Assembly (NCBI GenBank): GCA_963924565.1
Contig: OZ004611.1
Location: 17,980,001 to 18,044,000 of the forward strand
Reading direction: 5' to 3'
DNA length: 64,000 nucleotides
DNA from: Ascidiella aspersa
Lineage: Eukaryota
Under the pieces are notes generated by a model. The model was not told the DNA's origin. It did not search any database and worked only from the letters and a program-made list of their open reading frames with translations. The position numbers were made by a program, and so were the translations under genes. This document shows positions 32,224-60,659 of this stretch, piece by piece. The first letter of the stretch is position 1. Each line of letters opens with the position of its first letter.

Positions 32224-32520
32224 ATGTTGGCAGTCGATTCGGCGCAAGCCAGTTGGATGCCGGTGCCCTACCCTCCGACCGGCATGGTCCCAAGCAACCA
32301 CCATCTTCCCCCGCCCCCAATGGCATCAACTGGAATGCCAGCCGACGTGAAACCGTACCTCAGTGATTCGATGTCGATCGGCGGACAAATGACGCACATT
32401 TCCCCGCCTGTTTCCCACCATCCGCAGGCCCACGCGCAAAATCACCAGAACAGCTCCAATGCGGCCGCAGCCAAGGCAGCGCAAGAGCAACGCGTCAAAC
32501 GACCAATGAATGCTTTCATG
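32224..32520 (+). CDS. SoxB1: SoxB1 coding exon 1
   Basis: First ATG (aaaATGt) after the acceptor at 32068; 99 codons ending PMNAFM|GTAAGT. Confidence 0.9.
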
Positions 32521-34875
32521 GTAAGTTACTACCACTACTGAGTACTAAACTTTCTAGCTAAATCGTCTAAAAATCTAAAATAGGACCCCACTAGCATATC
32601 GTCTTTGAAAATCACTGGTTAAAAGCGAATAATAATGAATTAATTGTAACGCCGAAACTGTGTTTTGTTGGGTATAGGCAGTTGCGACAGATATTTTATT
32701 GGTCATTGTACAAACGCCACAGGGATCGCATTTACAAAGCGGCCGCAATAAAACCTTGTCGATCGACAGTTGATATTTCGTCTTTGACGTAATTCCAAGG
32801 TCGTTAAAGCGACTTACGGCTGGTCCCGAGTACTGACTCCCGCAAATTGTCAACTATGGGAATTTTGCCTCTAGGTGTGGAAATATTGATTCTTTGCAGT
32901 GGTTTTAGCGTTAAATTGCGTTAAAAGCATTTAAAGGTCCTTCAGATACGCTTGTGTTGTTTAAATATATTTCTGGATTAAAATTGCAAGTTAACATAAG
33001 AAAATTATCGAATGGTCATATCAAACCTAATTCGAGAAAAACCCTTTTTTATTTCTTCGATCTTGTATCGAAGTTTATAAGCTCCCATAGAAAAATGCTC
33101 GGTTCTATAGTCCAAACGAATGTCCCGCCAGGCTACAAAAATCCTTCAACTGGTCATATTTGACGAGCGATGACAGGCACCCTATAGCGTGACTTGCACT
33201 CGTTTCGTCCCTCCATTTAAGCTTCGTTTTCTTCAATACTGCTGTGCCGTTAGGCGGGCAAAACAAATGACAGAAAAATGCCTAAATATTATGCTGGTAA
33301 ATTACTGGTATTATAAATGTTAGTTAAAAAACAATAAAATCCTGAATGTGTTAGTGAAAAAACTACAAACGTGATTCGCGCGAAGCGAATTTTGTGTATT
33401 GGCGTCTGGACCGCCATTTTGTCTGTCCTTTTTGCGGCAAGATGGCGCCCTAGCGGTAGGGATTAGACTTAATTTAATTTTGCCAACTCTAGAATAATTA
33501 CAAGCGGCACTTGAAGTTTCTGCCGCCGATTAAAAAGTGCCTAAATAAAATCGCGCAGGTGTAATTTCGCCTTTGTTCTCCCAGTGCGGAAGTGTCCAGA
33601 CAGGTAGTTACGGCACATAGACTGAATAAAGCGTAACAATAGACTGGCTGCAGCCCCCCGAATTGTCTTTAATTTGTTACACTATTGTCCGTCTTCTCGC
33701 TACTAGTTTTAAGTGAACAGATAAGGTTGCAACTTATTTTGTAGAATAGAACAATGCCTAGAAGGCGTATACACCGAAGGTAGTATTTAGCGGCGTTCAA
33801 CCAATTTTTAGAAAAAATAATGCGCTAATTAAGTACGTGGTGGTTTGCAATTCACGAAAGCGGCTATTTATTGTGTTATTTTTTTCTTTAATAGTTTGCA
33901 TATGAATCAGGAAATTGCATTAACAATTTTATTATTTATTAGGTTTGGTCACGTGGACAGAGACGCAAGATGGCACAAGAAAACCCCAAAATGCACAACT
34001 CTGAGATTTCCAAGCGTCTCGGCGCCGAGTGGAAAACACTTTCGGACACAGACAAGCGCCCGTTCATCGACGAAGCCAAGCGTCTCCGCGCCCTGCACAT
34101 GAAGGAGCACCCCGACTACAAGTACCGACCCAGACGAAAGACAAAGCCAATCCTCAAGAAGGACAAGTTCCAGATGGGCGGCAGCGGCATGATGCCGTCC
34201 AATGTTCTTCCCGGTGGACCGAACCGTAACCCCAACCCGATCGATTACTCACAACTCTCGCATAGCTACTACGGGCACCAGGTTTCGCCGCAAGATCAGA
34301 TGAGTTCCTATGCCAGCGCTTCACCACACGGCTTCCCAAGTCACCCGGGTATAGGAAACGGCGCCGCCGCCTCACAAAGATACGAGCCTATGTCGATGTA
34401 CTACCCGGCGTACAGCGGAGCCGCTACAGCTTTGCCGAGTATGAGTTCCCTGACCGCTCAACACAACGGCTACCCACCACAGGCCGCTTACTCGGTGGGT
34501 TCGCCCGCTTACAGCCTTCCCCAGCCCCACACTCCGACCAACTCGATCCACAGCATCGCTGGCTCCCATCACAGCAGCAGCGGGGTCCACTCACCCGCCA
34601 ACACAAGCCCGGGGGCTTCGTCGGTCACGTCAGCACCCCCGTCGTCCGGTGGAAGCCCTATTCACCAACCGGGGCTCTCTATGCTGCCCGGCCACGCGCA
34701 AATTAACCAGATGTACCTGCAGATGAGCAGCGAGAGTCAAAGTAACCCACCCGCTAACGATCCAGAATCTCCCGGGATGTCGAGGGTGAACAGCATGCAG
34801 CCGTCCCCACACTACCAGGCTGTGTCGTCAGTTGGCCAGGTGCCAATGAATATGCACGTGCCTCACAACATGTAA
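32224..34875 (+). CDS. SoxB1: SoxB1 (Sox1/2/3) HMG-box transcription factor, 2 coding exons, 409 aa (whole-gene span)
   Basis: Exons 32224-32520 and 33943-34875 join to give [10 protein letters not shown]|[31 protein letters not shown]...[21 protein letters not shown], the group B HMG box and B-homology tail. The long Ser/Pro/Tyr-rich C-terminus with INQMYL and terminal PHNM resembles the B1 motifs (MISMYLP, PLSHM). Confidence 0.95.
33943..34875 (+). CDS. SoxB1: SoxB1 coding exon 2
   Basis: ttatttattag|GTT TGG TCA (VWS); open to TAA at 34873-34875. Confidence 0.95.
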
Positions 34876-36190
34876 ATTGGCTCCAGACTACACATCGAAA
34901 CCCTAGAAGAGCGCCGTTCCCCGAGGTTGTATTCGCACAGGACACGGAGGGATATAAACACTAGCAGCAGCAGTAGCTCTGCGGCAGCCTCGCTTTTTCT
35001 TTGGTTAGCGAACCACCAACTGTGACCCGCTCCCTCGCTCTCTCTTTATATAATCCAATGTAAATAGGAGGCAAAGTTATTAAAGTCGGGCTCAGCAGTG
35101 CTGGCTCAAAGAATCGACACATTCCAGCTTTTTGTACATAAGCCACTGTCGCATATCACGTCCTCACAAAGCAGATCGTTATTGCAGCCTGCTTGATGCA
35201 TTTCGTTTTATCAATCAGCCTTCATGGCTCTTAACTTTTCGATGACACCTACGATATAATTATCGATATTGTTTCGTTCATGGTTCGTATTTATTGCTTG
35301 TTCTTTTATTGCTTTTACCAGTAACACATCGGAATTGCATATCTATCTTCAAGCCACACTGTCCCACTATTTCCTCTATATAACAGTAGCACCGATATAT
35401 TGCAAACGGTCTGATTTTCGAAATAGGTTTGCCTATGTAGTGACGAATTCTGCCGTTGTTATTAGTCTCTGCATATAATACACATTGTCGCATGATCAAG
35501 AATTGTATTAAATTCAAGTGTCTGATCATTTACGCTTCATTTAAATTTAGATTTCCAATAATATATAAGTGGAACCAGAATGTTCTAGCTAAATTTGTTC
35601 ATTATTCACTTTGATTATTATTATTCTCAAAAAAGAATTTTATGTTTTTAAACTGTAATACAAAGATACTCCAACTGCTTCAACGATAAAAACTAAAAAT
35701 GCCAAATTAAATGCTTCAAGATTTCGTTAATTTTTCGAATTTACGTATTTATTTCTCGCTCACTGTAGCACATTTTTGAAACTCCCATCCCATTTATTTC
35801 ATTTTGTGATTCAAACGTACTCTGTTTTTTGCCGTTTTCTATTTTATTGTGTCACCATCATTTGTGACATTGCTAACCGTAACAGAGCGCTTTTCGTATC
35901 ATGGCGATTTTTGGCTTTCGGATAGTTATTTCGTATGCCCTGGTTGGCACGAATTTGACTTGATGATACGAATCAGACATCCAAATTCTGTTTTTGTTAT
36001 TTACGCACGGATTTTTTTTTGAGCTTTTGCAAAAACAAACCATGTTTTTTACGTGGGTGAGTTTCTTCTAAATATTGCTTTAATAATATCCCACACTTTT
36101 ACACGATACCGATTTTCTGTTGTTGTTTTTGTGCTGTTTTATTTGCTGTCGAACAGCGGTAGTCGATTATGGTAGTGCTGAAATAAAAAT
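34876..36190 (+). other. Probable SoxB1 3' UTR ending near AATAAA at 36182-36187
   Basis: U-rich sequence after the stop codon. The first AATAAA I could find is at 36182; ATTAAA variants occur earlier. Confidence 0.5.
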
Positions 36191-39100
36191 CTCCTACAAA
36201 CAGACCAACAAGAATGTTTTTTGTGACAACATTAAACAGCAATTGTTCTCATGCAAGTACAGACATTTTATAAGTTTATCATTAAAATATTATGAAGAAA
36301 AGCATTGATTGTGACAAAGAGAATAGATTGTTTTCAGTTCATTCGGTGTCAAGAAGAGAAAAATACAGCAAAATATATTTCAACATCGACAAGAATAATA
36401 TTTTTTTAAATAACCTAATTAACACGTACTACCGAAAATACGAGCATTCATTTCCACGACACAACTTTTGGGTCATGAAAAAACATCATTTCAGCTTTCT
36501 TGCGTCGTCTGTTGTGTTGGTAACGGGGGCCTCGGGTTTGCTTATTTAAGGCGTTGCCCTTTAGAAAGCAATCTGACCGTAACCATCGTGCGCCCGCTGC
36601 ATAGGGAAAAGGGTTTAACCGAGAGGAAATCATAAATTATTTCTAGGGTCTTACTTATTTTATTTCTGTACCACTTTGCCTTGAAAGTCACGCAAAATTC
36701 ATGTATAGACTTTCTTTATCTACCATTTGAACAAATACTGTAAGAGAGCTGTCGATGTCAATGTTCTTGCATGGCACATAAAAAAAAAAATTTCACGGCA
36801 ATTTTGCCAATATATGCGCCTTGGTGGTCGTACACAAGAGAGGCGCGGACTTATTAGCTCGCGACATGCGACAAACCTTGTAATCCGCTTGTAATCTCGG
36901 CCAAACAAAAAATATTTCTGCGGACCAAAAGCTTATGCTTGGCAACTTGGCCGAAAAATCGATAGACGTAGACAGCACCCAATCAAATCTTTTGTCCGTT
37001 GTAAAGCCACAATAGAAGCGCCTTGGCCAATTTATTTTATGACAATGGCTTAATCTTACCCCGGGAGCTGCAGTACCTTCCCAGGGTGCAGTTGGGTTCC
37101 TAAATAGGATTTCAGACAATAAGGCAGGAGAATGTGTATTTGAGTGTCGTTGATGGGATTGCAAGAAGGATTCCCCTGGCAAAAAACAAGGTGATTAAAT
37201 TGCTTTAGATTTGAAAAAGCCCGATTTCATTGATTATACCACGTACGTCGAGGTTTCGGGTAACATTTCGGTTAAATTAAATTTTGGTTTGTGTTGTAGA
37301 TAGCCATGTATTTAGTGGAAAAAAACTTTATAATCCAATCCAAGAAGAAACCTATTTTGTGTTATTTTTGTTGCAGCGTAGGTATAACAAGCGTGTTTGA
37401 CTTGTATTCTTACATTGTGCAAAGCTTAACTTTTCGATATTCAGAGGCACTGATTATCACAGCAGCACCGGGAAGTTTGAGCTAAGAGGGCTTGATATTA
37501 CGATCGCACGAGCTTGGAACGACCAAGCCAGTACTCAGAGCGCATTTGAGTGGATGTAAGTGCATGCTATAGCTTGGCGGTTTAGCGATTTTTAGATTTC
37601 CATACGGTGCCCGACACTGGCTTCGTGTGCCTATGCGCGGGCTTTGTGCTACTTACCCGATCTTAACATCTTCGCTCTGGAAAACGCAGTGCTCGGCCAC
37701 TTTCCGATACGCTTTTCCCCCTGGAGGGTGGGGGTGGGCTCGTCGGCGAATCGGAAAAGTGGCTCTTCGACTTGTTTTTTCGTCTCATCTCGACAGGCGG
37801 CAAGTGGCGCTAAGCGAATTAGTAGTGGTCACAACATTTAACGAACATCACCTTCGAGCGAATGAACTAGTAAAATTAAATCGGTTTAACAAACGAATTT
37901 TACCTATAATTAACCTACTACTATATTTCACTTTTAAAACATGATACAATTGTTAAGTTAATTTCTTTTTGGCACACCGAGCACTTTATTAAATTAACTT
38001 TTGGAAATTTAGACGATACATTTCTTACCTTACCGAAAAAAGGTGTGTGTTTTAATATGATTTCTTAATAGATACAACCTCAAGGAAAATCGTAAGGTCA
38101 ATAATAATTTATTCTCAAAGCAGCGTGTATAAAAACGCTGAAGATAGCATTTTATTTCTACCCATGCACTCGCTCCCCAGAGGGTGATTAAGTGTGGTGT
38201 ATTTGTTTCTCTCCCACAGTTGCATTCGTAGATATTTCTCTACGCTGATGTGTTTACGCTCATTGAATTTCCGGGGCGTGGGATCAACGAGCGGTGTGTG
38301 TGTAACGAGGCGTGACCACGTTAATCATGTGCCACATCAGAATACCAACCAAGAAAATGCAGCAACAAACCCTTCGTTGATGTGGAGTGGCGAAAGTCTT
38401 AAAGAATATTAAATATGGGTACCATTTCTTGCAATCATATTCATATGTAACAAGTTGTTTATACCACGACGTGACTCTAAAACGTCCGTAAAATAGTTTA
38501 TTGTTTGATTCTCCCACAGACGATTGTTTTATGTTTTACATAAAAAAACAAGTTTTCTCTATTAAACCATAGTTTTCGCCATAGCCGAGAAACCATTTTT
38601 CTAGATATTCAAATCATATCACAATATGTACATTAAAATATCGAAAATAGTTAAATAAATAAAATATGTAAAGCAGCAATTTATTTTTGCTTTGCAAATG
38701 AACTGTTTCCGTGACAATCACATCGTATAGGTTTTAAAATATGAAGGAGTTTAAACTATATTATATCCAAGATTATTCTGCCATGTACATTATACAGTTG
38801 CGACAAAAATTTGTATGGCAAATTCGTTCATTATATGGACCGAAAATTTACATTCATGAAATATCTTGGTTTTCAAACATCTTGGAGGGTTGCTAAGTTT
38901 ATATCGTTTTATTTGCTTCGTTTCGCTAAACGACGAAGGCTAAACTTTAAGGTATCCAACACCGATACAATTTTCACGCGATATGACAAGAAAAACGTTT
39001 CACACGGTAAACTCTAGTCGACCGAGGTTTAGTCATGCGCGACGATATCCATGCGTCATAAAATGGCCGCGTGTGACAATCAGACTTGATAACTAGTTTG

Positions 39101-42100
39101 GGGGATTCACTTGGGTAAAGACAGCGGTGGGACCGGTGTGGGTTTCCCATGGGGTTAAAATGCAATGAGCACAAGTGGGCCCAAGCCCGGTGAGAAACGG
39201 GGTCGCGTTTCACCCCACTGAATGTCTTGACGACGAGTTTTAACTTTTGGGTTAATATAATAGTTTTTCAACAGACATCGATGAGGTACCTAAACGGGAG
39301 TAATAGGGGTAGGGGTGGGAAGTGTCTTCCGGCAAATAAATTCTGTTTTTTTTACTCCAAAGTACTACCTCATTTTACTCCAAAATACGACCAAGACCTG
39401 CGAAATCACTTGTGTTTACCAAAATTTATCAGGTGTCTATAGGTAAGATTTTTAATAAGGAAAAAGGGGTTAATAAATTGGCAACATAATATTGAAATGG
39501 TTGGCATATGAGCAGAAATGGAAATCGTTGTTACAAGTATGGGTGTGAATAAACATTGAGAGTGTCTCGGTTCGTTACCCTTGGTACCGCCCTTTCCTCG
39601 GGAAGTGCTTCATAAAATCGTCCAAAAAGTACATTCTCACTTTTAATGTGTCGTAACAAGAGTGCTGGGATGGGGATAATGACTGGGGCGCCTCGGGGGC
39701 CTTTTTGCAGGGGCGTATCGACCCCACTTAAGTCCCAGTGACGTGTAACCACTGGCCGGGGTAAAAATAAGTTGCTCGCGTGTAGTGCCCCCCCTGGTCA
39801 TGCCCGGTTTCGCGTCGTAGCGACATTTGTGTCGCAGTAAAAGTGCTCTAAAAGCAAACCTTCTGCAAGTAACCTTTCTGCACTTCGCACGATGTTTCGG
39901 CTGGAAATGCGAACCCAGTGATGCAAGGCAGCGCGGTCAACATAAGTTTCCGTCTTCCGCTGTTGCTTTCCCGACAACCGCCAACGATATACAGCTAAAG
40001 AATATTAAAGCAAACGCCACAGCTAAAAAATATTAAAGCAAATATTGGAAGCCATATATAAGAGAAACGTTTACTTCTTACCAAAACAAGTACAAAAACA
40101 AGCACATACATAATAATCTAAGTTAGTAGCTGTATTAAAGAAAAAAATTAGGGTTTAAATTTATTTTAAATCATTCAACATACAAATAAATATATAATAC
40201 TTGTTTACCGTAGCTAAAAGACCTAAAGGTAGACGCTGCTATAAGATTTTTATATGGCAAAATTGCTTTTACATACCGTTCTTTATAAGGTCGCGATAAT
40301 TGGTTCTCTAAAAAAATGTCCAATCTAATTTAATTTTCATAATAACTGATAGTGATAGGAATACAGTAAAATAAAATAATATCCTTATCACGATATGTCA
40401 TGGTATTACAACAGTAACAGTAAAACAAACTTCAATCAACGATAGTAAAATTCAAACAGCTGTGTGGGCGTATTAGGGTACACGCGTTGTCGTCCCACCA
40501 CCACCCCCTTGGGTAATTTGATACCACACAACTTCGACCATCCAGAAAGCCTCAGCTCCTGTACAAAACCCAAGGTCATCGTTTCGAAAGCGAATCTCTG
40601 AGCATACGTCATGACTCTTTGTATCCCTGTCGCGTGTCTCTTCTTAGGCGCATTAGAGGGGATAATGACTGCGAAATGACTATCGAGGAATTAAAGAAGA
40701 CAATGGGTAGCCGCAAAAAACGGCATTCTGTGAAAGAACTTTTTTTTTATGTTTCCTGGATTTATGTACCCAGGAAATCATATCAACAATTTTGTAAATT
40801 TGCACACAACTACAAAAATGATCGAACTTGAAAAAGGCTTTCCTGTTTCATAAACAACATAGCGAGGCCGCTGATTAAAGAGAGGTGCAAATCAAATCAG
40901 AAAAAACCCGGGGCTGATAATATGTGGGTTTCATAGCGAATTAAAAAAAATTAAAGTAAATTTGGTGTCTATATGGAAAAAAGTGTTCCACGGAACTCGA
41001 ATGGAAATAACGCAGAGGCGAAGATTGACGGGTTCCCGTAGAAAAGATGGAAGGCAGGGCTGTGATCACTCGAGCGTGACGATTCGAGGGATGGGAGGAA
41101 ATGCGTTGCAATTGGAGCGAAGAGCGCGTAAGAAAAACACACAACTTCTCGATTCGGTAAACATATAATGAAGATTGGGTGACTCGGGCGGCGTGAAATC
41201 GTTAAAGGAATAGTAATACTTCAGTCCATTTCATTTCACATTCTGTGCTTTCAGAAAAAAAAACAGCTGCGAACAACAAACTGTATTTGCATCAACATTT
41301 CGAAAACTTAACAGCCAATATTATTAGGCAGCCTTTTTATTGCACAATACATTTCCCATGAACCAAAATATCACGAAACGCTGAGATGGCAAGCAATTGC
41401 TCCCCAAGGGACGTTCGCGCAAAAAAGAGCTTTCTCTCCCAGCAGGGGTCGAATCCAGCGCAAAACGCGACGAACGCAACGGCATGTAGCAGGCAATTGA
41501 GACAACACACTTTATTGCATCTCTCTTCCTGCAAAATGACTAAACTTGGCGAATAACTGTTCGATTTAAACTGCCAACCACCCTTTGGAGATATACCAGT
41601 CACCCACCCCAAGTTAGGACAGTGCAGAAATGTTACAAAAAATATGATAGAAAAGCAAAGCACAGTTGATGTGGAATTAATTGATAACGAGATCTGCATA
41701 GCTTTGAGTTTTGCAACGAAATAGAATATTATTTGAAGAAAAGAAGAAAGTGCGAACAATATAAAAAAATATGCGCTTTTAGTGTCTATTTGTCATACAA
41801 ATTCAGGCGACACGGTCGTACTGACATATTTGAATGTTTAGTGTGTTTTAAAGTGACTCGGAAACGGCAAGAATACAAACCACATTGAAACATACCACAC
41901 ACATATATGTGGGTGAAGTAAAACAAAACCACCGTTTAATTGCCTCCAACAGAAAGTCATTTAAATGAATCGCCAGTAATTTAATATTGCTGGTAGACGA
42001 CACATCAGAAACCAATATGCCAACGAACACTTTAACCTATTGGCTTTGTTATAGCAAGCGTGTGTCATCGTATGATTCAAACCATTTCTAATGTCATTCG

Positions 42101-45178: not shown

Positions 45179-46683
45179 ATTTAAACCATTCAGGCACCAT
45201 TCCTTAATGTTATATTTTACATGCAAAAGAGAGTTTCCTAGAAAATGAAAATAACTGTTCATTGACATAGGATAGTCTGTAAGATTTAGTTCGTAGGCCT
45301 TAGGATGTCGCAGAATTAGTTGTGGAATTTTTCCCAAAAATGTACGACACCAGAATAACACATAGCATTAATATTTATTAGGTTCGCGTGCTATCGAAGT
45401 GTCGATTTTATGTGCCTACGCTTCGTATCTAATGTACCGACCTACAATTAGTCGAAATGAGGTTTTATCCTGTGTTTGTCGGGCGTAGCAAATTGCCAAC
45501 CGGGTGCCCAGTTGCCCGTGCCAATCGTAACGGACAACAACGATTTGCCATAAATGTTTAATAGCATTTAGATCGGAGCTTAAAATTACTGTTTCATGAA
45601 TTACTATAATGGTCGGTCTGCATGGATATGTGTCGTGTGCCGTATCGTATAGGTACTTAAAAAGCCGATATTCTAGCGGCGTCTTAATTTTATTTTATGT
45701 AAGTGCATGGTAACCAAAATTTTACTACTTTATTCTGTATGGTGTAAATAAAGTTGTTGTATGAAAAAAAAAATAAAGTTTGTTTAGTTTCTCTATTTAA
45801 GCAATATATTTGATTGCACAGTTGGAAAATAATACACGTTGATCTACAGGCCATTAACATTGTAAGTAATCATGAAAGCAAGTGTTTTTATTAGCAATAC
45901 TCTAGGTTGTACTTACCCTTCATAACAAGTTACTTTCGTTAAACCAACTGAAAAAATGCCACGGTCAATGACGTTGGCCGTACAATCTCGCTCCGGATAA
46001 CCTTCCCTTTGCCACACGAAGGTTTCCAGGATGCGACAGCCGACAGGGCATAAGGCGGAAACAGAGTGTGGCGCTTTGATCCGCGATAAATATTAATAAA
46101 GGGATTTCCCGTTTCCAAGTGAAATGCAATTAGTAGTTGTTCATTTGAAATAGCGAGGCGGCGTACATCTTTATTCTTCGCTCCTTAGCCACGTTTAGTC
46201 GCAATTGCAACAATCATAAGATTAGCTGCTGGCTTGACCGGTGCCATTTAGCAAGCCTCATTACATATTTATCAGACCTCGAACAGCGCTGTTTTTATCT
46301 GCCTCTGACCGAAGAGAATTTGATACAAGCGGAGTTTCAAATACTAGATGGTCTGCTATTATCAAGTTGATTGGTCAAGTGGTCACGCAAGTTTGATTCA
46401 ACGGAAAAGAAGGTTGCTGATCATTTTCCCCGAATAAATAGTTATAAACAGTGTAAAAATCATTCGATTTGTCTCCTTTTTCTAATATTAATTTTACCCT
46501 TACAAGTTACACTACTTTTAAATAACTTTTTTTAATTTTTTGAGTAAAAAGAAGATAATTTTGTTTCAATGTTAGCAGTTAATCAAAATTTGCTGTAAAA
46601 TCAAAAATTTTAAGTATTCAAAGCAAGTGGCTTATTATATGTTGTATGCTGAATATCCCAAGATACACGAATCCATTATATAG

Positions 46684-46706
46684 TTTTTTTTTTTTTTTTT
46701 TTTTTT
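46684..46706. repeat. Poly(T) tract
   Basis: About 23 consecutive T. Confidence 0.85.
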
Positions 46707-47022
46707 ACGTTGCGATTAAGTCGCTTAAATTGTGACGTATTGTGGGCAGTATTTCTGACCAAGAGTGCGATTTTTAGAATCTCTTCCCAGCTATATATGA
46801 CCGAAATAAAACGGTCGAATCATGTTTTCCAACCGTTATGCTGGCGTGAGCGTGTCGACGTAAATGGGCGAGATACTATGCCTGACGTAATGTGAAATAT
46901 GTGCGCAACTACCTCTGATATAGATCCAAAAATACGGACAAACTAACAACACCAAAACACCAAAACTAAGGAAAAAGTGGAAAATATGACAGATTGTAAA
47001 AATTATTACATTTGTATAAAAG

Positions 47023-47130
47023 TAGGGCTACCATACGTCCTCATTTAAGAGGCCTTGTATTCTTTTAAAAGAAAAATGAATGGTTTTCCCCAGAACACTG
47101 AAAACACCCAAATGTCCTCCTTTTATATTG
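47023..47130. mobile_element. Terminal fragment of the same GAGGACA MITE family
   Basis: About 100 bp colinear with the reverse complement of 9214-9313. Confidence 0.6.
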
Positions 47131-50100
47131 CCCTTTTTGCTTATCTTTTTAAAATTATTTTATTTTCATGTGACGTTTCAGTATGATAGATCTATATTTA
47201 AGTCAACTAATTTTTCAGCGATAAAATGAGTTGTAATCATTTTGTTGTCAATGATTCATTTTTTTTTAATAAAATGTAAACAATATACACATTTAATCCA
47301 CGTGGTTTGTCTTTGTTTTCGTGCTGCGATTTGATCACGTTCTTTGCTAAACCTTTATAAATGGCGATTTCTAAAAGTACGCAAAAATCACGTTATACTG
47401 CTCAAATGGTTTGGTGATGGATCGCTTTTGGCGGTTGTATAATTTGCGCATAGTCTCCATGGAGATGCAAAAGGTCGGGAAACTGGCCGCAAACATGTTT
47501 TTAGAAGAGTAGATACAATATTCTGAATTTTCGTACTGCACTACACCAAAGCATGACATACTATACAAGTTAAGCGTTCATTAAGCAGGTGGCTGTAGAG
47601 GTTCACCCCGATACTCTATTGTACCTTCTAAGAGCTACTTGATTATTTACGCGGAATGTAACAATTTGTGTTTTATCTTGTAAAAAAACGAATCAAACGT
47701 CGTTCTGTTTTCGGAGGTAATGATAAAGGAACAAATCGTCAATGTCTTTAGGTGTGATAGTTCGAACGTAATTCGTCAGCTCACAGAAGAAGCACATTTT
47801 CAACTTGCCTACAGAAATAGGGATTTTGTCGGACATGGAGTTGGCATCCTGCATGACGAACGCGGATGGTTCGAGGTGCGAACGTATCCCGTATTTACCC
47901 GGGAATTAGGCGCACGCCGCATCACGTTCTTTCTCGTAAAGTATAAACAAGGAAAGCTAACGGGGAGTGGAGGTACGGATCGGAGAGTCAGTCGATGTCT
48001 TGCCAAAAAAATCCTAAGCGAAGAGAACCCAGCCCAGGCCAAATATTGATTCGGAATTAATAGATGTGACAGATTTGAAATGCGAGCTGGCGGGACGGCG
48101 ATATATCAAAGCGCCCAGCGTCGGGCGCCGTCGGCCAAGGCAAATAAGACAAACACACATCGGCACGAGAAGGTGCAGCCGCGAAACGTCGTTGGCGATA
48201 GTATTTGCCAGGCATCGGCGTTTGACCGGCTCAATACACACCTTGGCGTATTGCGACGTCTTTTTTTCCCGCTGGGGTTGGCCTTTGGGTGCGCTTCTGC
48301 TGACGTCAATGGTTGCAGTTTGCGACAGATCCGCGGAGCCTTTTGAAGGTGACGCCGACTGTTGACACAAACTTGTTCCATTCTTTCGTCGCCAAGCAAA
48401 AACGCATAAGTCCATTGACGCGCGCTGAATATGTCAACTATTTAAATGTTCATTTTCGTTTTACAACGTTTTTGGTGATATAATTGAGTATCTGGCGCGA
48501 AATTTATTTTGGAAGACAACTATTTTTCATACATTATGTGGGGCAATAAATCATTAAAACAGCTCATATTTATAAAAAAATAGTTTGATTCAAGTTCAGC
48601 TTGAGCAGAAAAATTGCCAACGACGATTTCAATGTTTGTTCAAGATAAACATTATAAAACGGTTTATGGAAGTTCATTTGCTTTAGATCGCCGTGTCTTA
48701 TATCGAAAAAAATGTATATGAGAGTCGATAAAAATAGACTGACAAAAATACCAGAGTAAGTTCGATTGGTTTTAAAGAGCTTTCTGGACTTGTGCCATTT
48801 GAAATTATTTAAATGAACCCTTTGCTCAGCATTCCATTCACAACGACCGTCGCTCTGATGAAGTCTAACGTTGAGCGAGTTAATCTCGAAAAAATAAAGC
48901 AAACAGTAAATTCCGGTCACCATGTTGAAGAAGAGAAAGTCAATTAATTGGCAACCGGATGATGTTGGTGCGACGTAATTGGTTTGCGCTAAGGCAGCAA
49001 GCAGATGTTTGCCCTCTCAGTTTGACGAGTAATCGTACAAACACTCGACTTCAAACGAAGCGAAACCGAGATTCGGAGATGTCCATATTGACTAGAGAGT
49101 GGGTGAGAGTGGTACCTAAATGTGTATGTGTGCTTGTATGAACCCTATAAAAGATGTTTGGCGAAGGTCAAAATGAGCTTTTAGCTGTTTTTCATTTAGA
49201 TTTTATACACCTGGGAATAGGAGCCAATGCTATATTAAACTACTGTATTTACCCAATAAAACCATTTTGACATTATTATGTAGTTCTTCTGTTTATATAC
49301 ATAACCCTTGATTATCACGCACAAGTGGTAAAGAATGTCACATATAGGCGATCTTCACTTTTGCTTTATAACTACGTTTACACTTGTATTAATGGGTTTG
49401 AAAATGTCTTGTTAAGGTTTTATGGGTATTTTTGTCATATGAAGAATTGCCCATAGTCCTGCTTTGTTTTAATAAAAAATAAGGTTTTTACATAACAAGA
49501 CAGACTTTTAAAGTAACCCTTACACGATTTACGTTGACGCTCTGTCTTTCTGTTGGTGCAATTATTTGCGTGTCGAAAAGTGTCGAAATTATGAGATTTG
49601 GTCGCATATAAATTGTTGACAAGCAAACATCCACTTGGCTCCCGGCGCACTTCTAACCTTACCAACCAGCCACCAATCACACTCTGCTCCAACACAGCAC
49701 CACTTCACTTCGCCACCATCAGGAAGGTCGCGACGGGTTGGCTGTTGTCAATGATTAACCAAAGAGTATGTAGGTAGGCTGGGTCGCGCGCGATCAATTT
49801 AACAGTCGTGGCGGGCGCGGGACGATCAAAAAAACGAGCGATAGCTCATTAAAATCCCGCCCCTGCGACAGGCCGGAGCGCGAGGTTTGCTTTGCCTGGG
49901 CGAAAGATCTGCACGCGCAGGCTTCGTCGCCATTTGAGCACACACTCTGTTGGATTCTGGTTGTTGGCCAAAGGTGTGTTAAAGGATTGACCGTTCTCAA
50001 TTTTGCCCGAAATTGTTGCTGTTCGCCATGCTGGATCGATTTGATCTTATAAATGAAACACTATTTATTAAAGAAATGTTTTCTTAAGACTGCTTTGTTT

Positions 50101-53100
50101 ATAAGTGAAACCGCAACATTCATTCGGCAGCTTGACCGATTTATTTACTACATTTTCCTATGTTAGAGCTCCATTGCTGTGAGAGCACATTTTGACTAAC
50201 CACATAGTGAGAGGTGGGCAGTGTGGAAGTTAACTAGTTTAGAAATATGACAGATTTTTTGTTGTCTACATCAAACACAAACAAGCATTCATTTAATTTT
50301 TCTATCCACTTTGTAGTGGGTTTAAAGAGCTGACCGCTTGTTTTAGTTTCTGCAATTTGTAGTTTAGACAACCATTTCTGTTTAACCAATAGCCTTTAAC
50401 CGGTGTATTAAAACATAAACGCATATCACTGAAAGGATTCAATTACCAACTTGGAAACTGTCTCATTATGTAACCGCCTTTAAAATGTTTTTAAACTTTT
50501 ACCTTCGCGAATTCCATCATTCTCAACTCAACAGCTGGCAGCCTAAATCGGGTTTCGTGACTTTACACCGCAATAGGGTTTTCGAATTACCGGGTTGTGA
50601 AGTTTAAAAGATCGCGTGTGAAACGATGAAAATAGGAAGTATTCACATACAACAGAAAATCCTTTGCAAGTCGTAATTGTGAGATTGAATATTTTAAAAC
50701 TCGAAATTGGTATTACGTTTTTTTCTTACTAAGTAAAGTGTAACATTTTTCTTGAAATGTTTTTCTGGTGGGCTAAACAGTTACAAAACATTTATGATAA
50801 CTGCATTTTCTAAAAAAATCCCTATGGTGCAAAAACAGGTTTTGTGGCGGGTAAAATTGAAAATGCAATAAAAACCTCACTGAACAAGTTTTTGTGCGAT
50901 TATATCTGACAGATAAACTACTTCACCGGGTGGAATAACATCGGTACTCTAAATGTCATTGCGTGAACAACAGATTTCTAAGTCTTATTTAGTTTACGAT
51001 GGTACACTTGAAGCATAAACCTTGCGGAAACTAGGCGTTGGTAGCTTTGCCTGTTTTCCCTTCTTTAAGCGCAGAGCAAATCCCGAGCCCAAATAACTTG
51101 AAAGCGCCAAGGCGGTCGTCGCCTGTGCCGGTAATGATGTATAAGCCGCAGGACCCCCCGCACTCGCTGGCTGCCATATTTATCGCGAGGCGCGCTGTTT
51201 TCTAGCTGTGCTTACGGGCGCATCCAAGTTAGCGCAAGACAATGCGCACCCGCCGAGCAGACGAAGACCACACAATTTTGTGCGGCCCCGTTTCTGTTGA
51301 TAACTGGCGCTTTACAGTTATTGAAACACGATTGGCGATTTTTGAAAAGACCTTATTAAACTTTTAAAAAGTATTTATAAATTGTTCCTGTTTCCGTCCC
51401 CAATTTGGCTAATTTATTTATCAAAAATGGTTGGGCCAATTTTGTGACCATTAAAATATTCAAGGCATACGTTTTGCTGTGCATCTTTGCAATTGTCAGT
51501 ATGGGTATAGTTAGTGAATGTATCTTACATTTTTTTGCGCTTAAAGCGAATGCAAACCTAACGATTTCAGCGAACGACCAGCAATATTTCATTTAAAGAA
51601 TAGATGGACATTGTTATTGCAGGTCACAATACAGACGAATTGTTTGGCCGCCTACCAGAGTTGTCTTACGTAAATTTCACTGCCTGTAAATAAAACAAAC
51701 AATTTTCAAACTTTAGAAAAGTATCTGGCCTATTTTTGAAATATGCTTAAGGAATTGAATTAAATTTACATATCATTAAAATATTAAAATGTTGGTTTCT
51801 ATTATTAAATATATATATTTCGTCCTAAATGAATAAAAACAAGATATTATAAATAGTTTATGTATCAGTTACAAAAGCGTAAAAATACCATTTTAATTGG
51901 TGTAAAAACACTAACATCAAAATAACGTTTTAAAGATGGCATACATAAAACAACTGTTAAAAAAGATATATTTTAACTGTCCCATGGCATTAAAAAATAA
52001 GCCATGCATCTCTGTGGTGGAAATTCACGTTCGTCCTCTATCTTTTGTCCTGCAGCCATCAAAGTCTACTGACAGCCTGGGAAGCGAATTCCCGTGCAAT
52101 GACACACCACACAAGGACATAGAGCATAGTTGAAAAGGATCCATAGAAAGTCAAAACAAGGCCCTCTTCACAGAAGCCGGGCCTTTTATTCATCGGATCG
52201 GGTAAAAAAGCGTAGCGAGCCAGTTAAATCTGGTCGCTTTGTTAAAGCTTTTCAATGCGATCCCCCACACCACCACTACATACTATACTGTGCTACTCCG
52301 ATGTTAGAAAGATCCCTTTGTGCCACGCGACTGTCCCATTGATGCAGCATCACACACAAAAAGCTGGTGCTCCTTGTACGACGGAGGCGTGCTGGAATAA
52401 TGGAATACAGACAATGCGGAGAGGGCCCTCGCAAGCCGACTGTGTTACGAGGCAATGGTAAACTGTAGGCGGCTGCTGGTCAGAAACAATGCCTTTGAGG
52501 CGTCACACACTTTCCAGGAAGCATTGAATCACCTTTTATTCTGTCGCAGCAAGTGATATCGATTTGAGCGTTCAGTAAGCAGCAGCACCGACAGAAACAA
52601 ATTAAGGTAGAAAAAGCAGATTTTCAAGGACTCGGGAGTAATCATAGATCTGCTTAGTTTGATATTTTGTTAGGTTTGATAAGTCAAAAGTGTAATTACC
52701 AAAGAAGACGACGAAATTAAAGCGTATCTTTTTTCAAGGCAGAACGCAAGATACTTTTACCAAAAATGTATTTTGCTTTTCTACAAATTCAAGTATATTC
52801 GAAGAAATATTTTCTAAGCTGATATTGAACTTATGATACATAGCAATTGATATTTTTTTCAAATAACACCGATTTTGCTTTATTTAAGTTTTTGTTTCAA
52901 AATAATATAATAAACAAAATGGTGTATCTTCAATTTGATATACAAATATGTGCGATAAAATACTTGATATGGTTTGAAGCGTTACCATTACAGTAGCACG
53001 GAAAACAACAAATCAATCCCATAGTTTTGCACTAAACAAGATTTGTAGAATTTGTTAACGTATAGAATAGATATAGTTTTTATTGCGTACATTTGGCCGG

Positions 53101-54129
53101 TTAAATTTATTGGTTTTATTGCTTGTACTGAATAATAAAATCAACATAAGATAATACCAAACGATTCGTAGCCACACAAAGGTAGGCCTATATAGGATAC
53201 AGCGAAGTTTTTTTTAAAAGTTTGTTACGATATGTGAAAAATCGCAGTTGTAAAATGGCGCAATTAACGTTCGAAATTGCACAGGAGAACCAATGGCTAG
53301 TTGCGGCTCTTTACCGCCAAATGCGTTTAGTGGCTATCAGAAAGACGAATAAAATGGCCATAAGCGTTGAAATCGTGCGTAGTTGATGGATGTGACAGTA
53401 CAAACAGTAGAATGAAGCTAAAAGCGATATTGATGGAATCAATTTTCCGAGTGCAAACTGAGTGAAATCGCTTGTCGATTTTTACCTTTTTACCAAAGGT
53501 TTGGGCTTACAAAGGGCTTGTTTACATAATTTATTTTGACCTTTCGCAATTTTTAATTGCCGCCTTTTGGTATAACATCAACATATATGGTAACACAGTT
53601 TACTCACTATCAGGTGTTTATAATTTATTACTTTTAAATTTTAACACAGTATTTATATCATAAAAAATATGAAGAGAATCGAAGTTCGACGTATAAAAAG
53701 AAACAGCTGGGCAAACAAATCATTCTGTGTAAGTAAACTTTGTCCCTTTGTTAAAAAGTCCCCTACAGCAGCAGTGGTTTTTCTTACAACGTGAATAAAA
53801 AAACTTTGTCGGAAATATTGCCTTAAAAAAATATTTTTCTTGAATAGACACTAAGTTTTAAAAATAATTTTTATTTTATTCACAATAGACTCAACGTTAA
53901 TCGTCTGGAAATAAGATGTGATTGTCTGATTTATGTTTTTTACGGTTTGGGCATCCCGTAATACAAATTTAATTTCAGCGTTCAGATAAACCACAACAGC
54001 GTTTTTTATGTTGATTTTGTTAAAACTTTTAGAACAACATATATATTGACATTATTAAATCTTTACCCAACCTAAACGCGTCTACCAGGAGATATCCAGT
54101 GATTTTTTAAAACAAAACACACTATCTCC

Positions 54130-54367
54130 TAGGGCTCGCGTTTTAAAACATTTTTGCTCAAGGCTCACTTGATATAAGTAATCGAAACTAGCCCCCTATC
54201 TTAAATTAATATGTTGATAAACACAAATCTTTTACTAAATTTACTGTTAGGTTTAAAGTCGGCCAAGGTTTTCAGATCATCATAAAATGCGCAAAGGCAG
54301 TGAAAAAAGGCGCTTAAAACTGGCAGGCTGCTAGACTTTCTCGCACACACCAGTTAAAGAAGCCCTG
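54130..54367. mobile_element. Decayed hAT-MITE relic
   Basis: Right end tcgcacacaccagttaaagaagccctg resembles the CCAGTTTxAGAAxCCCTG terminus; left end degenerate. Confidence 0.3.
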
Positions 54368-55319
54368 CTATGCTATGCTATAGAGAGTTTGCGCCGCCTT
54401 CATAAGAGCTAATTAAAAGCATCAGGGACACTTGATCAAACACCGGACGCCAGAAAATCCAAATTTGTTACTACGGTGATAAACTGGTACGACTTGATTG
54501 TAAGCGATGACTCAACTTGGTCTGTGCAAAACGCTTTAACTATTGTGATATGTTATAACTTATAAATAAATATCGTGATCACGAGAATTTCGTTTGGTTT
54601 TACTCATATTTTCTTTCTTAACGATAGTAACATAATGTGCAGCACATTTTTTATTCTTTTTTGTTCCAAGCACAAAATCCGCATATATTACCAAAAAAGC
54701 ATATACGGAATCTGTTAAATACGTTAAATAAAACTATATAAAAAAAACAATTCGTTACGCATAATTGAATATTATAATTGCAAAGTTAAAATTCAAAGCA
54801 CGCGGGAAAATACTGTCTGTGGTCCCAGGAAGCAATGCGGTTTGACTGAGCAATGCGTTAATCACAGCGTAATCATCGTTGGAATCGTTTAAAATCACGT
54901 TTTACAAAGACTGTAGTTTCCAACATATGAAACGCAGTAGGCAAAATGTGGTAAACAAAAGCAAAAAAAACAGAGGTTAAACTCATTCGAAATAACTGAA
55001 AGGCTTCTTTTTTCAATTTGTCAACCAAGCTTTTGATAAGTATTTAAATAGGGCACCTTACCTACCACTCGTTATAATCCCCAAGTAGATCAAAAAAGAA
55101 CGCTGCTGGACTTTACCGTATCAATAAATCAGAAATCACAAACATAATATTCAACCCATGGAAAAAATATTCAATGAAACTGTTTTGAGAATACAAGGGT
55201 TTTATAACTGAACAAACCAACGGTAATAGTTAAAAAGAGATAGTATTAAATTTAATTACGTTTGATTTGGCAATATTTTACTAAACAATACTCGGGAGTC
55301 TAGACTCTGCTCTAATTGC

Positions 55320-55370
55320 TTATTCTTTCTTTGGTTTGGGACCGGCGTTTGCATTCCAATAGTAGAGGAT
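55320..55370 (-). CDS. MPDU1: MPDU1 last coding exon
   Basis: tatttacag|ATC CTC TAC TAT TGG ... AAA GAA TAA; 51 nt. Confidence 0.88.
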   Translation of the reverse strand: MLYYWNANAGPKPKKE

Positions 55371-55835
55371 CTGTAAATAGTTTATTTCATTCATTTTAGA
55401 AAAGAAAACACACACACACACAAACAACAACAAAAAACATAACCAAATTTTTATAATGCTATCAAAATAAGTTGTCCTATAATAGACACTTTTTCAAGAT
55501 CTAATGATTTAAATAAGAAAAAGTTTTTGCTTGTTAACTACTTAAATAATGTATCTCTACAATATAATGAAAATATGAGCAGGGAATAACTTCATTACGC
55601 TCAAAAATATAAATTCAGGACAAAACGGTAGAACTTTGTAAGCAACCCTTACTTGAAAAAGAATCGTCCCATTAGCAATTGTTGAAACCACGTAGTTGGC
55701 GATAACCAAGGAGTCTCCGGTCTCTTGAATCGAGGTAAAAATACGGGCCATGGAGCCCAGGAATAAAAGAGATACGGTAATGACTGAGAGCTGGCCCGTG
55801 TGACCGTTTTTGTAATTGTCCAACGCTTGGATTAA
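55320..55835 (-). CDS. MPDU1: MPDU1 (mannose-P-dolichol utilization defect 1, PQ-loop family), last two coding exons; 5' exons not found in the window
   Basis: Exon 55835-55653 reads LIQALDNYKNGHTGQLSVITVSLLFLGSMARIFTSIQETGDSLVIANYVVSTIANGTILFQ; exon 55370-55320 reads ILYYWNANAGPKPKKE*. Together they match the MPDU1 C-terminus (NGHTGQLS...GSLARIFTSIQETGD...YWN) with a di-lysine-like tail. Splice sites are canonical and phase 0. Confidence 0.93.
55653..55835 (-). CDS. MPDU1: MPDU1 penultimate exon
   Basis: ttttcag|TTA ATC CAA ... TTT CAA|gtaagg; 183 nt. Confidence 0.92.
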
Positions 55836-60073: not shown

Positions 60074-60137
60074 TATAAACTACTATTGACACGAACACTT
60101 GTTTTCATAATATAAACTAGTATTGACACGAACACTT
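60074..60137. repeat. 27-bp local direct duplication (period 37)
   Basis: tataaacta(c/g)tattgacacgaacactt at 60074 and 60111. Confidence 0.85.
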
Positions 60138-60659
60138 TACATTTTGGGAAACTGTATTTCTTGTTAAAAATGCATTTTTAAGAGGAATTATCAATTACAT
60201 TATCAACTTTTTAAACGTTGTTCATAACTCGTGGGCCTTGCTTTTTTCTAAAACGTCATTACAGCTTCAATTTTTAACAGTTGAGGTATATTAGGTGAAG
60301 GTGGGTTTAACGAGCGTAAATAAAAAGTGGTAGAGCCACGCGAAGTTTTCTTAGAAAGGCGTTCTAAATTGTATAAAAATATAAATAAAAAACAAGCTTT
60401 TACAACCTCACTTTTAAAAAAGGATAGGTAAATAGCAATTAACGTCAAAAAACACAAATTACTACATAATTGGCTTTTAAAGTAGTGCAAAAGTTTTAGA
60501 AAGTTCGATTAAAAAAAAAACTATTCCGAGAAAAAACAAATTTTCGTTTACTATTGAAAACAGCTGGTCTTCAAACATTTTTCCGGTCAAACTTTGGCCC
60601 AACATCTCAACACTCGACCAGATCGTTTGAGTTTGTGTCACTCAAGAAACCCCGTTTGA

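What the first reader, a model, noticed from the sequence alone, without database searches (positions are those of the whole stretch)
32224..55835. SoxB1 and MPDU1 are tail-to-tail neighbours, the same pairing as mammalian SOX15-MPDU1
Seen: SoxB1 (+) and MPDU1 (-) converge with ~20 kb of gene-free DNA between them. Established knowledge, from memory: human MPDU1 lies immediately next to SOX15 in convergent orientation (CD68-MPDU1-SOX15-FXR2), and SOX15 is regarded as the divergent ortholog of fish group-B1 sox19. Inference: the linkage predates the vertebrate genome duplications and was kept by the Sox19/Sox15 paralogon. That would be independent synteny support for the B1 origin of SOX15 and would suggest a constraint holding the pair together.
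Basis: partly seen in the sequence, partly recalled or inferred. Interest (0 to 1): 0.8.

Follow-up and report, generated by a model that had tools for sequence, protein, structure and literature searches.

The report
Ancient SoxB1–MPDU1 gene pair in ascidians
In this sea-squirt genome the neural regulator gene SoxB1 and the housekeeping gene MPDU1 point at each other across 20 kb of gene-free DNA. Two other sea squirts and mammals (SOX15-MPDU1) have the same arrangement, so the pairing most likely predates the vertebrate genome duplications; it is a tidy new example of a known kind of conserved gene pair.

Summary
A two-exon SoxB1 gene (+, 32224-34875) and the last two exons of a seven-exon MPDU1 gene (-, 55320-55835) converge. 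The other five MPDU1 exons lie just past the window end. The stop codons are 20.4 kb apart, and I found no gene in between.

- Ciona intestinalis has the same tail-to-tail pair with a 19.9 kb gene-free spacer.
- Clavelina lepadiformis has it with a spacer of about 13.6 kb.
- Water buffalo reads EIF4A1-CD68-MPDU1(+) then SOX15(-)-FXR2, with MPDU1 and SOX15 0.8 kb apart.
- A 2021 paper reports sox15/sox19 next to mpdu1 in all jawed-vertebrate classes.

The genes outside the pair differ among the three ascidians. The linkage therefore most likely dates to the tunicate-vertebrate ancestor.

Limits:
- Amphioxus shows no Sox gene within 10 kb of MPDU1, and two unidentified tunicate-like assemblies show no MPDU1 within 10-18 kb of SoxB1.
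- The B1 origin of SOX15 is already established in the literature.
- A constraint on the pair is only suggested. In all three ascidians MPDU1's large intron 5 lacks the CpG depletion seen over its 5' exons, and there is one candidate conserved element in that intron.

Verdict: a new member of a known kind (an ancient regulator-plus-bystander microsyntenic pair). Interest is moderate.

The parts
32224..32520 (+). SoxB1 exon 1 (99 aa; N-terminal region plus the first 8 residues of the HMG box)
   Evidence: ATG at 32224 and GT donor at 32521. 71% identical to Phallusia SoxB1 residues 1-103. Aligns to Ciona SoxB1 exon 1.
32521..33942 (+). SoxB1 intron (1,422 bp, phase 0), inside the HMG box between ...NAFM and VWSR...
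   Evidence: GT...AG boundaries read directly. Ciona has its intron at the same position, as do two tunicate-like ENA assemblies.
33943..34875 (+). SoxB1 exon 2 (310 aa plus stop; the rest of the HMG box, group-B region and C-terminal domain)
   Evidence: Pfam HMG_box 1.2e-20 and SOXp. Best hits are Phallusia SoxB1 at 75% and Ciona SoxB1 at 61%, then Sox3/Sox2/SoxNeuro. SOX-2 is the best solved structure, E 4e-44.
34876..55319 (.). Convergent spacer, 20.4 kb, with no detectable gene
   Evidence: No Pfam domain in the ten longest ORFs. No Rfam family or tRNA. No tblastx match to the Ciona or Clavelina loci. CpG o/e is 1.15. The orthologous Ciona interval has no called gene.
55320..55370 (-). 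MPDU1 last coding exon (exon 7; ILYYWNANAGPKPKKE plus stop)
   Evidence: AG acceptor before 55370 and TAA at 55320-55322. tblastn with MPDU1 proteins.
55653..55835 (-). MPDU1 exon 6 (61 aa; second PQ-loop)
   Evidence: AG/GT boundaries. Pfam PQ-loop. 60-76% identical to proteins named MPDU1. 73% identical to Ciona MPDU1.
55836..64000 (-). MPDU1 intron 5, the part inside the window (the whole intron is 9.4 kb and runs to about 65244 in extended window coordinates)
   Evidence: Exon 5 lies at L006:1245-1430, that is 65245-65430. The same intron is 11.6 kb in Ciona and 7.1 kb in Clavelina. CpG o/e is 1.23, against 0.57 over the exons 5-1 region and 0.33-0.43 at 66-72 kb.
62908..62978 (.). Candidate conserved non-coding element within MPDU1 intron 5
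   Evidence: 73% identity over 71 bp to Clavelina MPDU1 intron 5, same orientation, E 3e-5. Single copy in this genome. A weak collinear match in the Ciona intron. 1 of 40 local shuffles reaches the same score, so this is a candidate only.

Best explanation
The window comes from a phlebobranch ascidian close to Phallusia. It carries the single SoxB1 gene of that genome and the 3' end of its single MPDU1 gene. MPDU1 is a PQ-loop protein of the ER dolichol-sugar pathway. The two genes are transcribed towards each other across a 20 kb gene-free spacer.

This tail-to-tail pair is inherited. It is present in three ascidian families from two orders, and in vertebrates as MPDU1-SOX15/sox19. It therefore most likely existed in the common ancestor of tunicates and vertebrates, before the two vertebrate genome duplications. 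Afterwards only one of the four SoxB1 ohnologs (SOX15/sox19) kept MPDU1 beside it, and SOX1/2/3 lost it.

Why the pair persists in ascidians is an inference, not something shown here. The pair may behave like a genomic regulatory block: SoxB1 is the developmental target gene, and MPDU1 is a bystander whose 3' half (the large intron 5 and the last two exons) lies inside the SoxB1 regulatory domain. A break between the two genes would then cut SoxB1 off from its control DNA.
For: Shown by tool results.
- Gene models and identities.
- Each gene has one locus in the genome.
- Ciona intestinalis: SoxB1 (+) and MPDU1 (-) are 19,915 bp apart on AP043567.1 with no called gene between. The two fetched flanks overlap by 85 bp.
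- Clavelina lepadiformis: 6.4 kb of the SoxB1 3' flank equals the MPDU1 3' flank on the opposite strand, which gives a spacer of about 13.6 kb.
- Water buffalo: EIF4A1(+), CD68(+), MPDU1(+), SOX15(-), FXR2(-), with a 0.8 kb gap between MPDU1 and SOX15.
- Literature: sox15/sox19 is adjacent to mpdu1 in mammals, reptiles, amphibians, teleosts, non-teleost fishes and elasmobranchs, and sox1/2/3/15 are 2R ohnologs (PMC8244163).

Pointing to a constraint.
- The genes outside the pair differ. Upstream of MPDU1 lies an ENTH/ANTH gene in Ciona, a ZIP gene in Clavelina and a sulfotransferase array here. The outer flanks share no coding similarity.
- The spacer stays gene-free and large, at 14-20 kb.
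- MPDU1 intron 5 is 7-12 kb in all three ascidians.
- In all three, CpG o/e is about 1.0-1.4 from the SoxB1 desert through MPDU1 exons 7 and 6 and intron 5, then falls to 0.3-0.66 only over MPDU1 exons 5-1.
- In amphioxus the whole MPDU1 unit, including its 21 kb intron, is CpG-depleted. Ciona gene-body methylation normally covers introns too (PMC3827831).
- One collinear candidate conserved element lies in intron 5.

General framework. Ancient regulator-plus-bystander pairs are common, and after 2R they are mostly kept in a single copy while the regulator is kept in several (PMC3514665, PMC7530604). The SOX1/2/3/15 and MPDU1 pattern fits this.
Against: - Amphioxus (B. belcheri) has no Sox HMG box within 10 kb downstream of MPDU1 or inside its introns.
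- Two unidentified tunicate-like assemblies have no MPDU1 within 10 kb, and in one case 17.8 kb, of SoxB1.
- Contigs from another tunicate-like organism have no Sox gene within 9 kb of the MPDU1 3' end.
- The other vertebrate neighbours are not linked here. LAMP-like exons lie on contig C4, and FXR domains were not detected at all.
- Apart from one short candidate, no non-coding sequence aligns between the three ascidians.
- In mammals the gap is only 0.8 kb and MPDU1 is compact. Any regulatory-block constraint seen in ascidians therefore cannot be the same thing there.
- CpG o/e is only a proxy for germline methylation. No methylation, chromatin or enhancer data were examined.
Confidence: 0.75

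Rival explanations
1. The linkage is ancestral but neutral. SoxB1 and MPDU1 have simply never been separated by a rearrangement, and nothing holds them together.
For: No alignable conserved non-coding DNA apart from one 71 bp candidate, and 1 of 40 shuffles reaches its score. In buffalo the gap is 0.8 kb, a very small target for breakpoints. Only one flank on each side was sampled per species. No functional data were examined.
Against: The genes immediately outside the pair differ in all three ascidians. The 14-20 kb spacer is a large target, yet it stayed intact and gene-free. The CpG domain boundary falls inside MPDU1 at the same place in three species. Published surveys find almost no deep conservation of pairs under randomised gene order (PMC3514665).
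Confidence: 0.3
2. The ascidian and vertebrate adjacencies arose independently, so the match is a coincidence. The pairing would then say nothing about the pre-duplication genome.
For: No Sox gene within 10 kb of amphioxus MPDU1. No MPDU1 near SoxB1 in two other tunicate-like assemblies. None of the other vertebrate neighbours (EIF4A1, CD68, FXR2) is linked in the ascidian. Needlefish mpdu1b has no Sox gene within 10 kb.
Against: With roughly 15,000 genes (my estimate from Ciona-like gene counts), the chance that a named gene is the immediate neighbour is about 1e-4 per side, and the orientation also matches. The negative results only cover 10-18 kb, which is less than the 14-20 kb spacing seen in ascidians. 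The pair is stable across three ascidian families and all jawed-vertebrate classes.
Confidence: 0.07
3. The two genes are not true neighbours because an unannotated gene or long non-coding RNA lies in the 20 kb spacer.
For: A single-copy, GC-richer island at about 47.7-48.9 kb carries 100-130 aa ORFs on both strands. One Clavelina annotation places a 128 aa unnamed model in the spacer. Only 5.9 kb was tested with RNA reads, without a positive control.
Against: No Pfam domain. No tblastx conservation with Ciona or Clavelina. No Rfam family or tRNA. No laid RNA-seq read on 45500-51400. No called gene in the Ciona interval or in the RefSeq-type Clavelina flank.
Confidence: 0.08

Closest known systems
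Vertebrate MPDU1-SOX15 (sox19) adjacency in the EIF4A1-CD68-MPDU1-SOX15-FXR2 block
   Same: The same two orthologous genes are immediate neighbours in the same tail-to-tail orientation (buffalo; all jawed-vertebrate classes per PMC8244163).
   Different: The spacer is 0.8 kb in buffalo against 14-20 kb in ascidians. MPDU1 is compact in vertebrates (3-5 kb) but spans 10-15 kb with one large intron in ascidians. The other block members (EIF4A1, CD68, FXR2) are not linked in the ascidian. The vertebrate partner is the divergent ohnolog SOX15 rather than a canonical B1 gene.
Ancient genomic regulatory blocks and conserved ancestral microsyntenic pairs (Irimia et al. 2012, PMC3514665; Touceda-Suarez et al. 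2020, PMC7530604)
   Same: A developmental transcription factor sits beside an unrelated housekeeping bystander gene that has a long intron. After the two vertebrate duplications the linkage is kept in one copy, while the regulator survives in four copies.
   Different: Those surveys required conservation in four or more major lineages. Here only tunicates and vertebrates are shown. No enhancer has been demonstrated inside the bystander. Their supplementary pair lists were not available to me, so I cannot tell whether this pair is already listed.
Ciona Ci-SoxB1 / Phallusia SoxB1
   Same: 61-75% identity over exon 2. The intron sits at the same place inside the HMG box. Lysine 57 of the HMG box is kept. 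Ci-SoxB1 can replace Sox2 in mouse ES cells (PMC5007870).
   Different: It is simply the ortholog in another ascidian, and nothing unusual was seen in the protein.

Membership tests
Sox group B1 | Sox-type HMG box | tested here: met
   Pfam HMG_box at E 1.2e-20 on exon 2. SOX-2 is the best solved structure at 151 bits, against 96 bits for the next group.
Sox group B1 | Similarity to B1 proteins beyond the HMG box, rather than to B2 | tested here: met
   Among the best 120 of 3,718 hits, every named protein but one is SoxB1, Sox1, Sox2, Sox3 or SoxNeuro (the exception is labelled SOX-5-like). None is Sox14, Sox21 or SoxB2. Alignments to vertebrate Sox3/Sox2 cover 55-67% of the 310 aa exon, while the HMG box is about 23% of it.
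Sox group B1 | A distinct B2 paralog exists in the same genome | tested here: met
   Contig C4 at about 16,152,320-16,152,929 encodes a second group-B HMG box followed by ...RRKPKSLIKPKDRFAFP, with an intron at another position. The window gene has ...[13 protein letters not shown]. Reading these tails as B2-type and B1-type rests on my memory of the families. The atlas look-up was not discriminating.
Sox group B1 | Placement in a phylogeny that includes Sox14/21 and Sox15/19 references | not tested
MPDU1 (PQ-loop, SLC66 family) | PQ-loop repeat, with best relatives being MPDU1 rather than other PQ-loop proteins | tested here: met
   Pfam PQ-loop. The top full-length representatives are named MPDU1 in fish, cattle, turtle, shark and amphioxus. 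Ciona and Clavelina MPDU1 match all seven exons.
MPDU1 (PQ-loop, SLC66 family) | Single complete gene in the genome | tested here: met
   Whole-genome search finds only the C5 locus, plus one chance-level hit at E 1.6. Seven coding exons were recovered.
Ancient conserved microsyntenic pair / genomic regulatory block | Adjacency of the same two orthologs in distantly related lineages | tested here: met
   This genome, Ciona and Clavelina, water buffalo, and all jawed-vertebrate classes (PMC8244163).
Ancient conserved microsyntenic pair / genomic regulatory block | Conservation in four or more major animal lineages (the criterion of Irimia et al. 2012) | tested here: inconclusive
   In amphioxus there is no Sox gene within 10 kb of MPDU1. 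Other phyla could not be reached because look-ups were exhausted.
Ancient conserved microsyntenic pair / genomic regulatory block | Bystander gene with unusually long intron(s) | tested here: met
   Intron 5 is 9.4 kb here, 11.6 kb in Ciona, 7.1 kb in Clavelina and 21 kb in amphioxus.
Ancient conserved microsyntenic pair / genomic regulatory block | Enhancers of the developmental gene located within or beyond the bystander | not testable with these tools
   Only indirect hints are available: a shared CpG o/e boundary inside MPDU1 and one candidate conserved element.

The most novel reading that the evidence does not exclude
SoxB1-MPDU1 is an ancient chordate regulatory block. In ascidians the unmethylated SoxB1 control domain reaches across the convergent spacer into the 3' half of MPDU1, so that MPDU1 is a gene split between two chromatin domains. 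After the vertebrate duplications SOX1/2/3 lost the bystander and became desert-embedded genes. SOX15 kept the bystander but lost the regulatory desert, which would help explain its functional drift.
Probability: 0.3. Interest if true: 0.55.

Novelty: new member of a known kind. Interest (0 to 1): 0.4.

Why it matters
It gives an outgroup anchor for the history of the SoxB1 genes. The neighbour that SOX15/sox19 has today was already the neighbour of the single pre-duplication SoxB1 gene. SOX15 therefore sits at the locus that kept the ancestral neighbour, even though its protein diverged most.

It also offers a compact, testable case for how a developmental regulator and a housekeeping gene stay linked in the fast-rearranging ascidian genomes. 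The spacer is only 14-20 kb and there is one large intron, which suits reporter assays in Ciona or Phallusia.

It does not change the accepted view that SOX15 derives from group B1.

Tried and rejected
Rules followed. Spliced models were searched exon by exon, by reference. I never joined exons into one query, so no search or fold of the whole SoxB1 or MPDU1 protein of this genome was made. No human contig was fetched. The mammalian check used water buffalo. Read laying was given 5,901 letters.

Steps that led nowhere.
- SoxB1 look-ups in Ciona and Clavelina with 10 kb flanks showed no neighbour. This was resolved only after full-length tunicate MPDU1 proteins were found with a profile of MPDU1 fragments.
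- The exon-6 searches returned no full-length tunicate MPDU1.
- ENA contigs carrying a tunicate-like MPDU1 exon had no Sox gene within 9 kb.
- Two ENA tunicate-like SoxB1 loci, one extended by a walking step to 17.8 kb, had no MPDU1.
- Amphioxus MPDU1 had no Sox gene within 10 kb.
- The cattle isoform was not on record.
- Needlefish mpdu1b had no Sox gene within 10 kb.
- 79 metagenome contigs with SoxB-like genes held no MPDU1.
- FXR domains (PF12235, PF18336) were not detected in this genome, and the searches had no working control. LAMP-like exons lie on another contig.
- No paper linking SoxB1 and MPDU1 outside vertebrates was found. The supplementary tables of the two microsynteny papers are not held.
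- The atlas look-ups did not separate B1 from B2.
- RNA-seq laid no reads on 45500-51400. With no control stretch possible, this is not evidence of silence.
- I first took the 71 bp match in intron 5 for a tRNA-derived repeat. It is single copy in this genome, so that idea was dropped.

Full report
**What is in the window**

The window is contig C5:17,980,001-18,044,000 of a 308.6 Mb, 75-contig assembly.

The + strand carries a two-exon Sox gene.
- Exon 1 is 32224-32520 and ends ...[10 protein letters not shown], followed by GTAAGT.
- Exon 2 starts after an AG at 33943 with [21 protein letters not shown] and runs to the stop at 34875.
- The phase-0 intron therefore splits the HMG box.
- Pfam finds HMG_box (E 1.2e-20) and SOXp on exon 2.
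- Exon 2 is 75% identical to Phallusia mammillata SoxB1, 63% to the Ciona savignyi protein, 61% to Ciona intestinalis SoxB1 and 60% to the Clavelina lepadiformis protein.
- Exon 1 matches Phallusia SoxB1 from its first residue.

The genome is therefore a phlebobranch ascidian near Phallusia. The runs that hold the sequence are coded as 'organism A'.

**B1 or B2**

- Where the best 120 hits carry names, all but one are SoxB1, Sox1, Sox2, Sox3 or SoxNeuro (the exception is labelled SOX-5-like). None is Sox14, Sox21 or SoxB2.
- Alignments to vertebrate Sox3/Sox2 extend over 55-67% of the exon, well beyond the HMG box.
- SOX-2 is by far the best solved structure.
- The genome has one further group-B gene, on contig C4. 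It has a different HMG intron position and a ...RRKPK...DRFAFP tail, while the window gene has ...[13 protein letters not shown].
- I read these tails as B2-type and B1-type from memory of the families.
- No tree with B2 references was built.
- Ci-SoxB1, the Ciona ortholog, is functionally B1: it rescues Sox2-null mouse ES cells (PMC5007870).

**MPDU1**

- On the - strand, 55835-55653 is an exon of 61 aa with AG/GT boundaries.
- 55370-55320 is the last coding exon.
- Exon 6 hits PQ-loop.
- An exhaustive phmmer search returns 676 relatives. The named full-length ones are MPDU1 from fish, cattle, horse, turtle, shark, krill, tardigrade and amphioxus.
- The first five coding exons are not in the window. 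They lie 1.2-3.9 kb past its end, after a 9.4 kb intron.
- All seven exons match Ciona and Clavelina MPDU1.
- MPDU1 has a single locus in the genome.

**The spacer**

The stop codons are 20,444 bp apart (34876-55319).
- There are no N runs.
- No Pfam domain is found in the ten longest ORFs.
- No Rfam family or tRNA is found.
- There is no translated similarity to the orthologous Ciona or Clavelina regions.
- One 210 bp interspersed repeat lies at 43479-43689.
- A GC-richer island at 47.5-49.8 kb is single copy.
- No RNA-seq reads from the one available run were laid on 45500-51400. No control stretch could be tested, so this is weak evidence.

Upstream of SoxB1 the nearest gene is a collagen-like plus discoidin-domain gene at about 5.1-6.6 kb on the - strand. 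SoxB1 therefore sits in a desert of about 48 kb.

**Is the pairing shared?**

A profile built from MPDU1 fragments retrieved the full-length Ciona intestinalis and Clavelina lepadiformis MPDU1 proteins.

*Ciona.*
- SoxB1 occupies AP043567.1:1,982,422-1,984,938 (+).
- MPDU1 occupies 2,004,854-2,019,979 (-).
- The genes are tail to tail and 19,915 bp apart.
- The two fetched flanks overlap by 85 bp, and neither carries a called gene.

*Clavelina.*
- The two genes were fetched from different assemblies.
- 6.4 kb of the SoxB1 3' flank matches the MPDU1 3' flank at 98.9% on the opposite strand.
- This places the gene ends about 13.6 kb apart, again tail to tail.
- One of the two annotations has an unnamed 128 aa model in that spacer. 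It has no counterpart in the other species.

These species belong to Ascidiidae-like, Cionidae and Clavelinidae, in two orders.

**The vertebrate side**

- In water buffalo the order is EIF4A1(+), CD68(+), MPDU1(+), SOX15(-), FXR2(-). MPDU1 and SOX15 are 0.8 kb apart and convergent.
- PMC8244163 reports sox15/sox19 next to mpdu1 in mammals, squamates, turtles, caecilians, frogs, teleosts, sturgeon, ropefish and elasmobranchs.
- The same paper treats sox1/2/3/15 as the four products of the two vertebrate duplications.
- The B1 origin of SOX15 is thus already accepted. The ascidian data add the pre-duplication state.

**Chance?**

- With about 15,000 genes (my estimate), a named gene is the neighbour on a given side about once in 15,000. 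Allowing both sides and both vertebrate neighbours gives roughly 3e-4, and the orientation also matches.
- Published randomisations find about 0.015 deeply conserved pairs per genome, against hundreds observed (PMC3514665).
- I therefore rate independent origin at well under 10%.

**Negative or open results**

- B. belcheri MPDU1 has no Sox HMG box within its introns or within 10 kb downstream.
- Two unidentified ENA assemblies whose SoxB1 has the tunicate intron position have no MPDU1 within 10 kb, and in one case 17.8 kb.
- These distances are shorter than the ascidian spacers, so they do not refute the linkage.
- FXR domains were not detectable in this genome, and LAMP-like exons lie on another contig.
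- Only the pair, not the wider vertebrate block, is shared.

**Is anything holding the pair together?**

Several observations point to a constraint, but none proves one.
1. The genes outside the pair differ. Upstream of MPDU1 lies an ENTH/ANTH gene in Ciona, a ZIP transporter in Clavelina and a sulfotransferase array here. The outer flanks share no translated similarity.
2. The spacer stays large and gene-free.
3. MPDU1 intron 5 is 7-12 kb in all three ascidians.
4. A compositional boundary lies inside MPDU1 in all three species.
   - CpG observed/expected is about 1.0-1.4 across the SoxB1 deserts, MPDU1 exons 7 and 6, and intron 5.
   - It drops to 0.3-0.66 only over MPDU1 exons 5-1.
   - In Ciona, gene-body methylation normally covers exons and introns of stably expressed genes and ends sharply at the ends of the transcription unit (PMC3827831).
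   - In amphioxus the whole MPDU1 unit, including its 21 kb intron, is CpG-depleted.
   - My inference is that the 3' half of ascidian MPDU1 lies in the unmethylated SoxB1 domain.
5. One 71 bp element in intron 5 (62908-62978) matches the Clavelina intron at 73% in the same orientation.
   - It is single copy here and has a weak collinear Ciona match.
   - It contains a CCATTGT motif.
   - One of 40 local shuffles reaches its score, so it is only a candidate.

**Fit to what is known**

- The pattern fits the published model of ancient regulatory blocks: a developmental gene plus a bystander gene with long introns.
- It also fits their fate after the vertebrate duplications, where the linkage is kept once and the regulator is kept several times (PMC3514665, PMC7530604).
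- In mammals the 0.8 kb gap and the compact MPDU1 show that the ascidian-style architecture is not retained there.

**Verdict**

- The inference that the linkage predates the vertebrate duplications is supported back to the tunicate-vertebrate ancestor.
- Deeper ancestry and the regulatory constraint remain open.
- This is a new member of a known kind, of moderate interest.

Noticed in passing
window 1-64000 and L006 (extended coordinates 64001-74000); L001+L017 (Ciona); L018 (Clavelina); L013 (amphioxus): CpG observed/expected stays at 0.9-1.4 over the whole window, including MPDU1 exons 7 and 6 and intron 5. It falls to 0.33-0.43 at 66-72 kb, over MPDU1 exons 5-1 and a few kb upstream. Ciona and Clavelina show the same boundary inside MPDU1. 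In amphioxus the whole MPDU1 gene is CpG-depleted.
   Followed up: partly
window 62908-62978: A single-copy 71 bp element in MPDU1 intron 5 matches the Clavelina intron at 73%, with a weak collinear match in Ciona. It contains CCATTGT and TGGGAA motifs. It is a candidate conserved non-coding element.
   Followed up: partly
window 32521-33942; L001, L014, L015: The SoxB1 intron sits inside the HMG box, between NAFM and VWSR. The position is shared by Ciona and two tunicate-like assemblies. Buffalo SOX15 has its whole HMG box in one open frame, so the tunicate SoxB1 intron lies at a different position from any intron in SOX15. PMC8244163 places the gain of the sox15 intron in bony fishes.
   Followed up: partly
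G000 contig C4:16,152,320-16,152,929 (L025): A second group-B Sox gene has a B2-like tail and an HMG intron after ...HNSEISK, a different position from that in SoxB1. A SoxC-like intronless gene lies at C4:16,493,913.
   Followed up: partly
window 5116-6626 (- strand): The nearest upstream gene has a signal peptide, a short collagen-like Gly-X-Y stretch and an F5/8 type C (discoidin) domain exon.
   Followed up: partly
window 43479-43689: A 210 bp interspersed repeat has at least 44 copies at 75-84% identity across the genome. Four copies are spaced about 11 kb apart at C5:20.456-20.490 Mb.
   Followed up: no
window 47500-49800: A single-copy, GC-richer island lies in the middle of the spacer, with 100-130 aa ORFs on both strands. 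It has no Pfam domain and no laid RNA reads. It may be regulatory DNA.
   Followed up: partly
L028 8107-8379; L007 892-1416 and 8266-8607 (C5:18.062-18.073 Mb): Repeated carbohydrate sulfotransferase (Sulfotransfer_2) exons lie about 14 kb beyond the MPDU1 5' end. They look like a tandem array.
   Followed up: partly
L013 (B. belcheri JALCYT010000035.1): The amphioxus MPDU1 model is 402 aa. About 190 extra N-terminal residues come from exons at 10001-11992, so it may be a fused gene model. The last MPDU1 exon is separated from the rest by a 21 kb intron.
   Followed up: no
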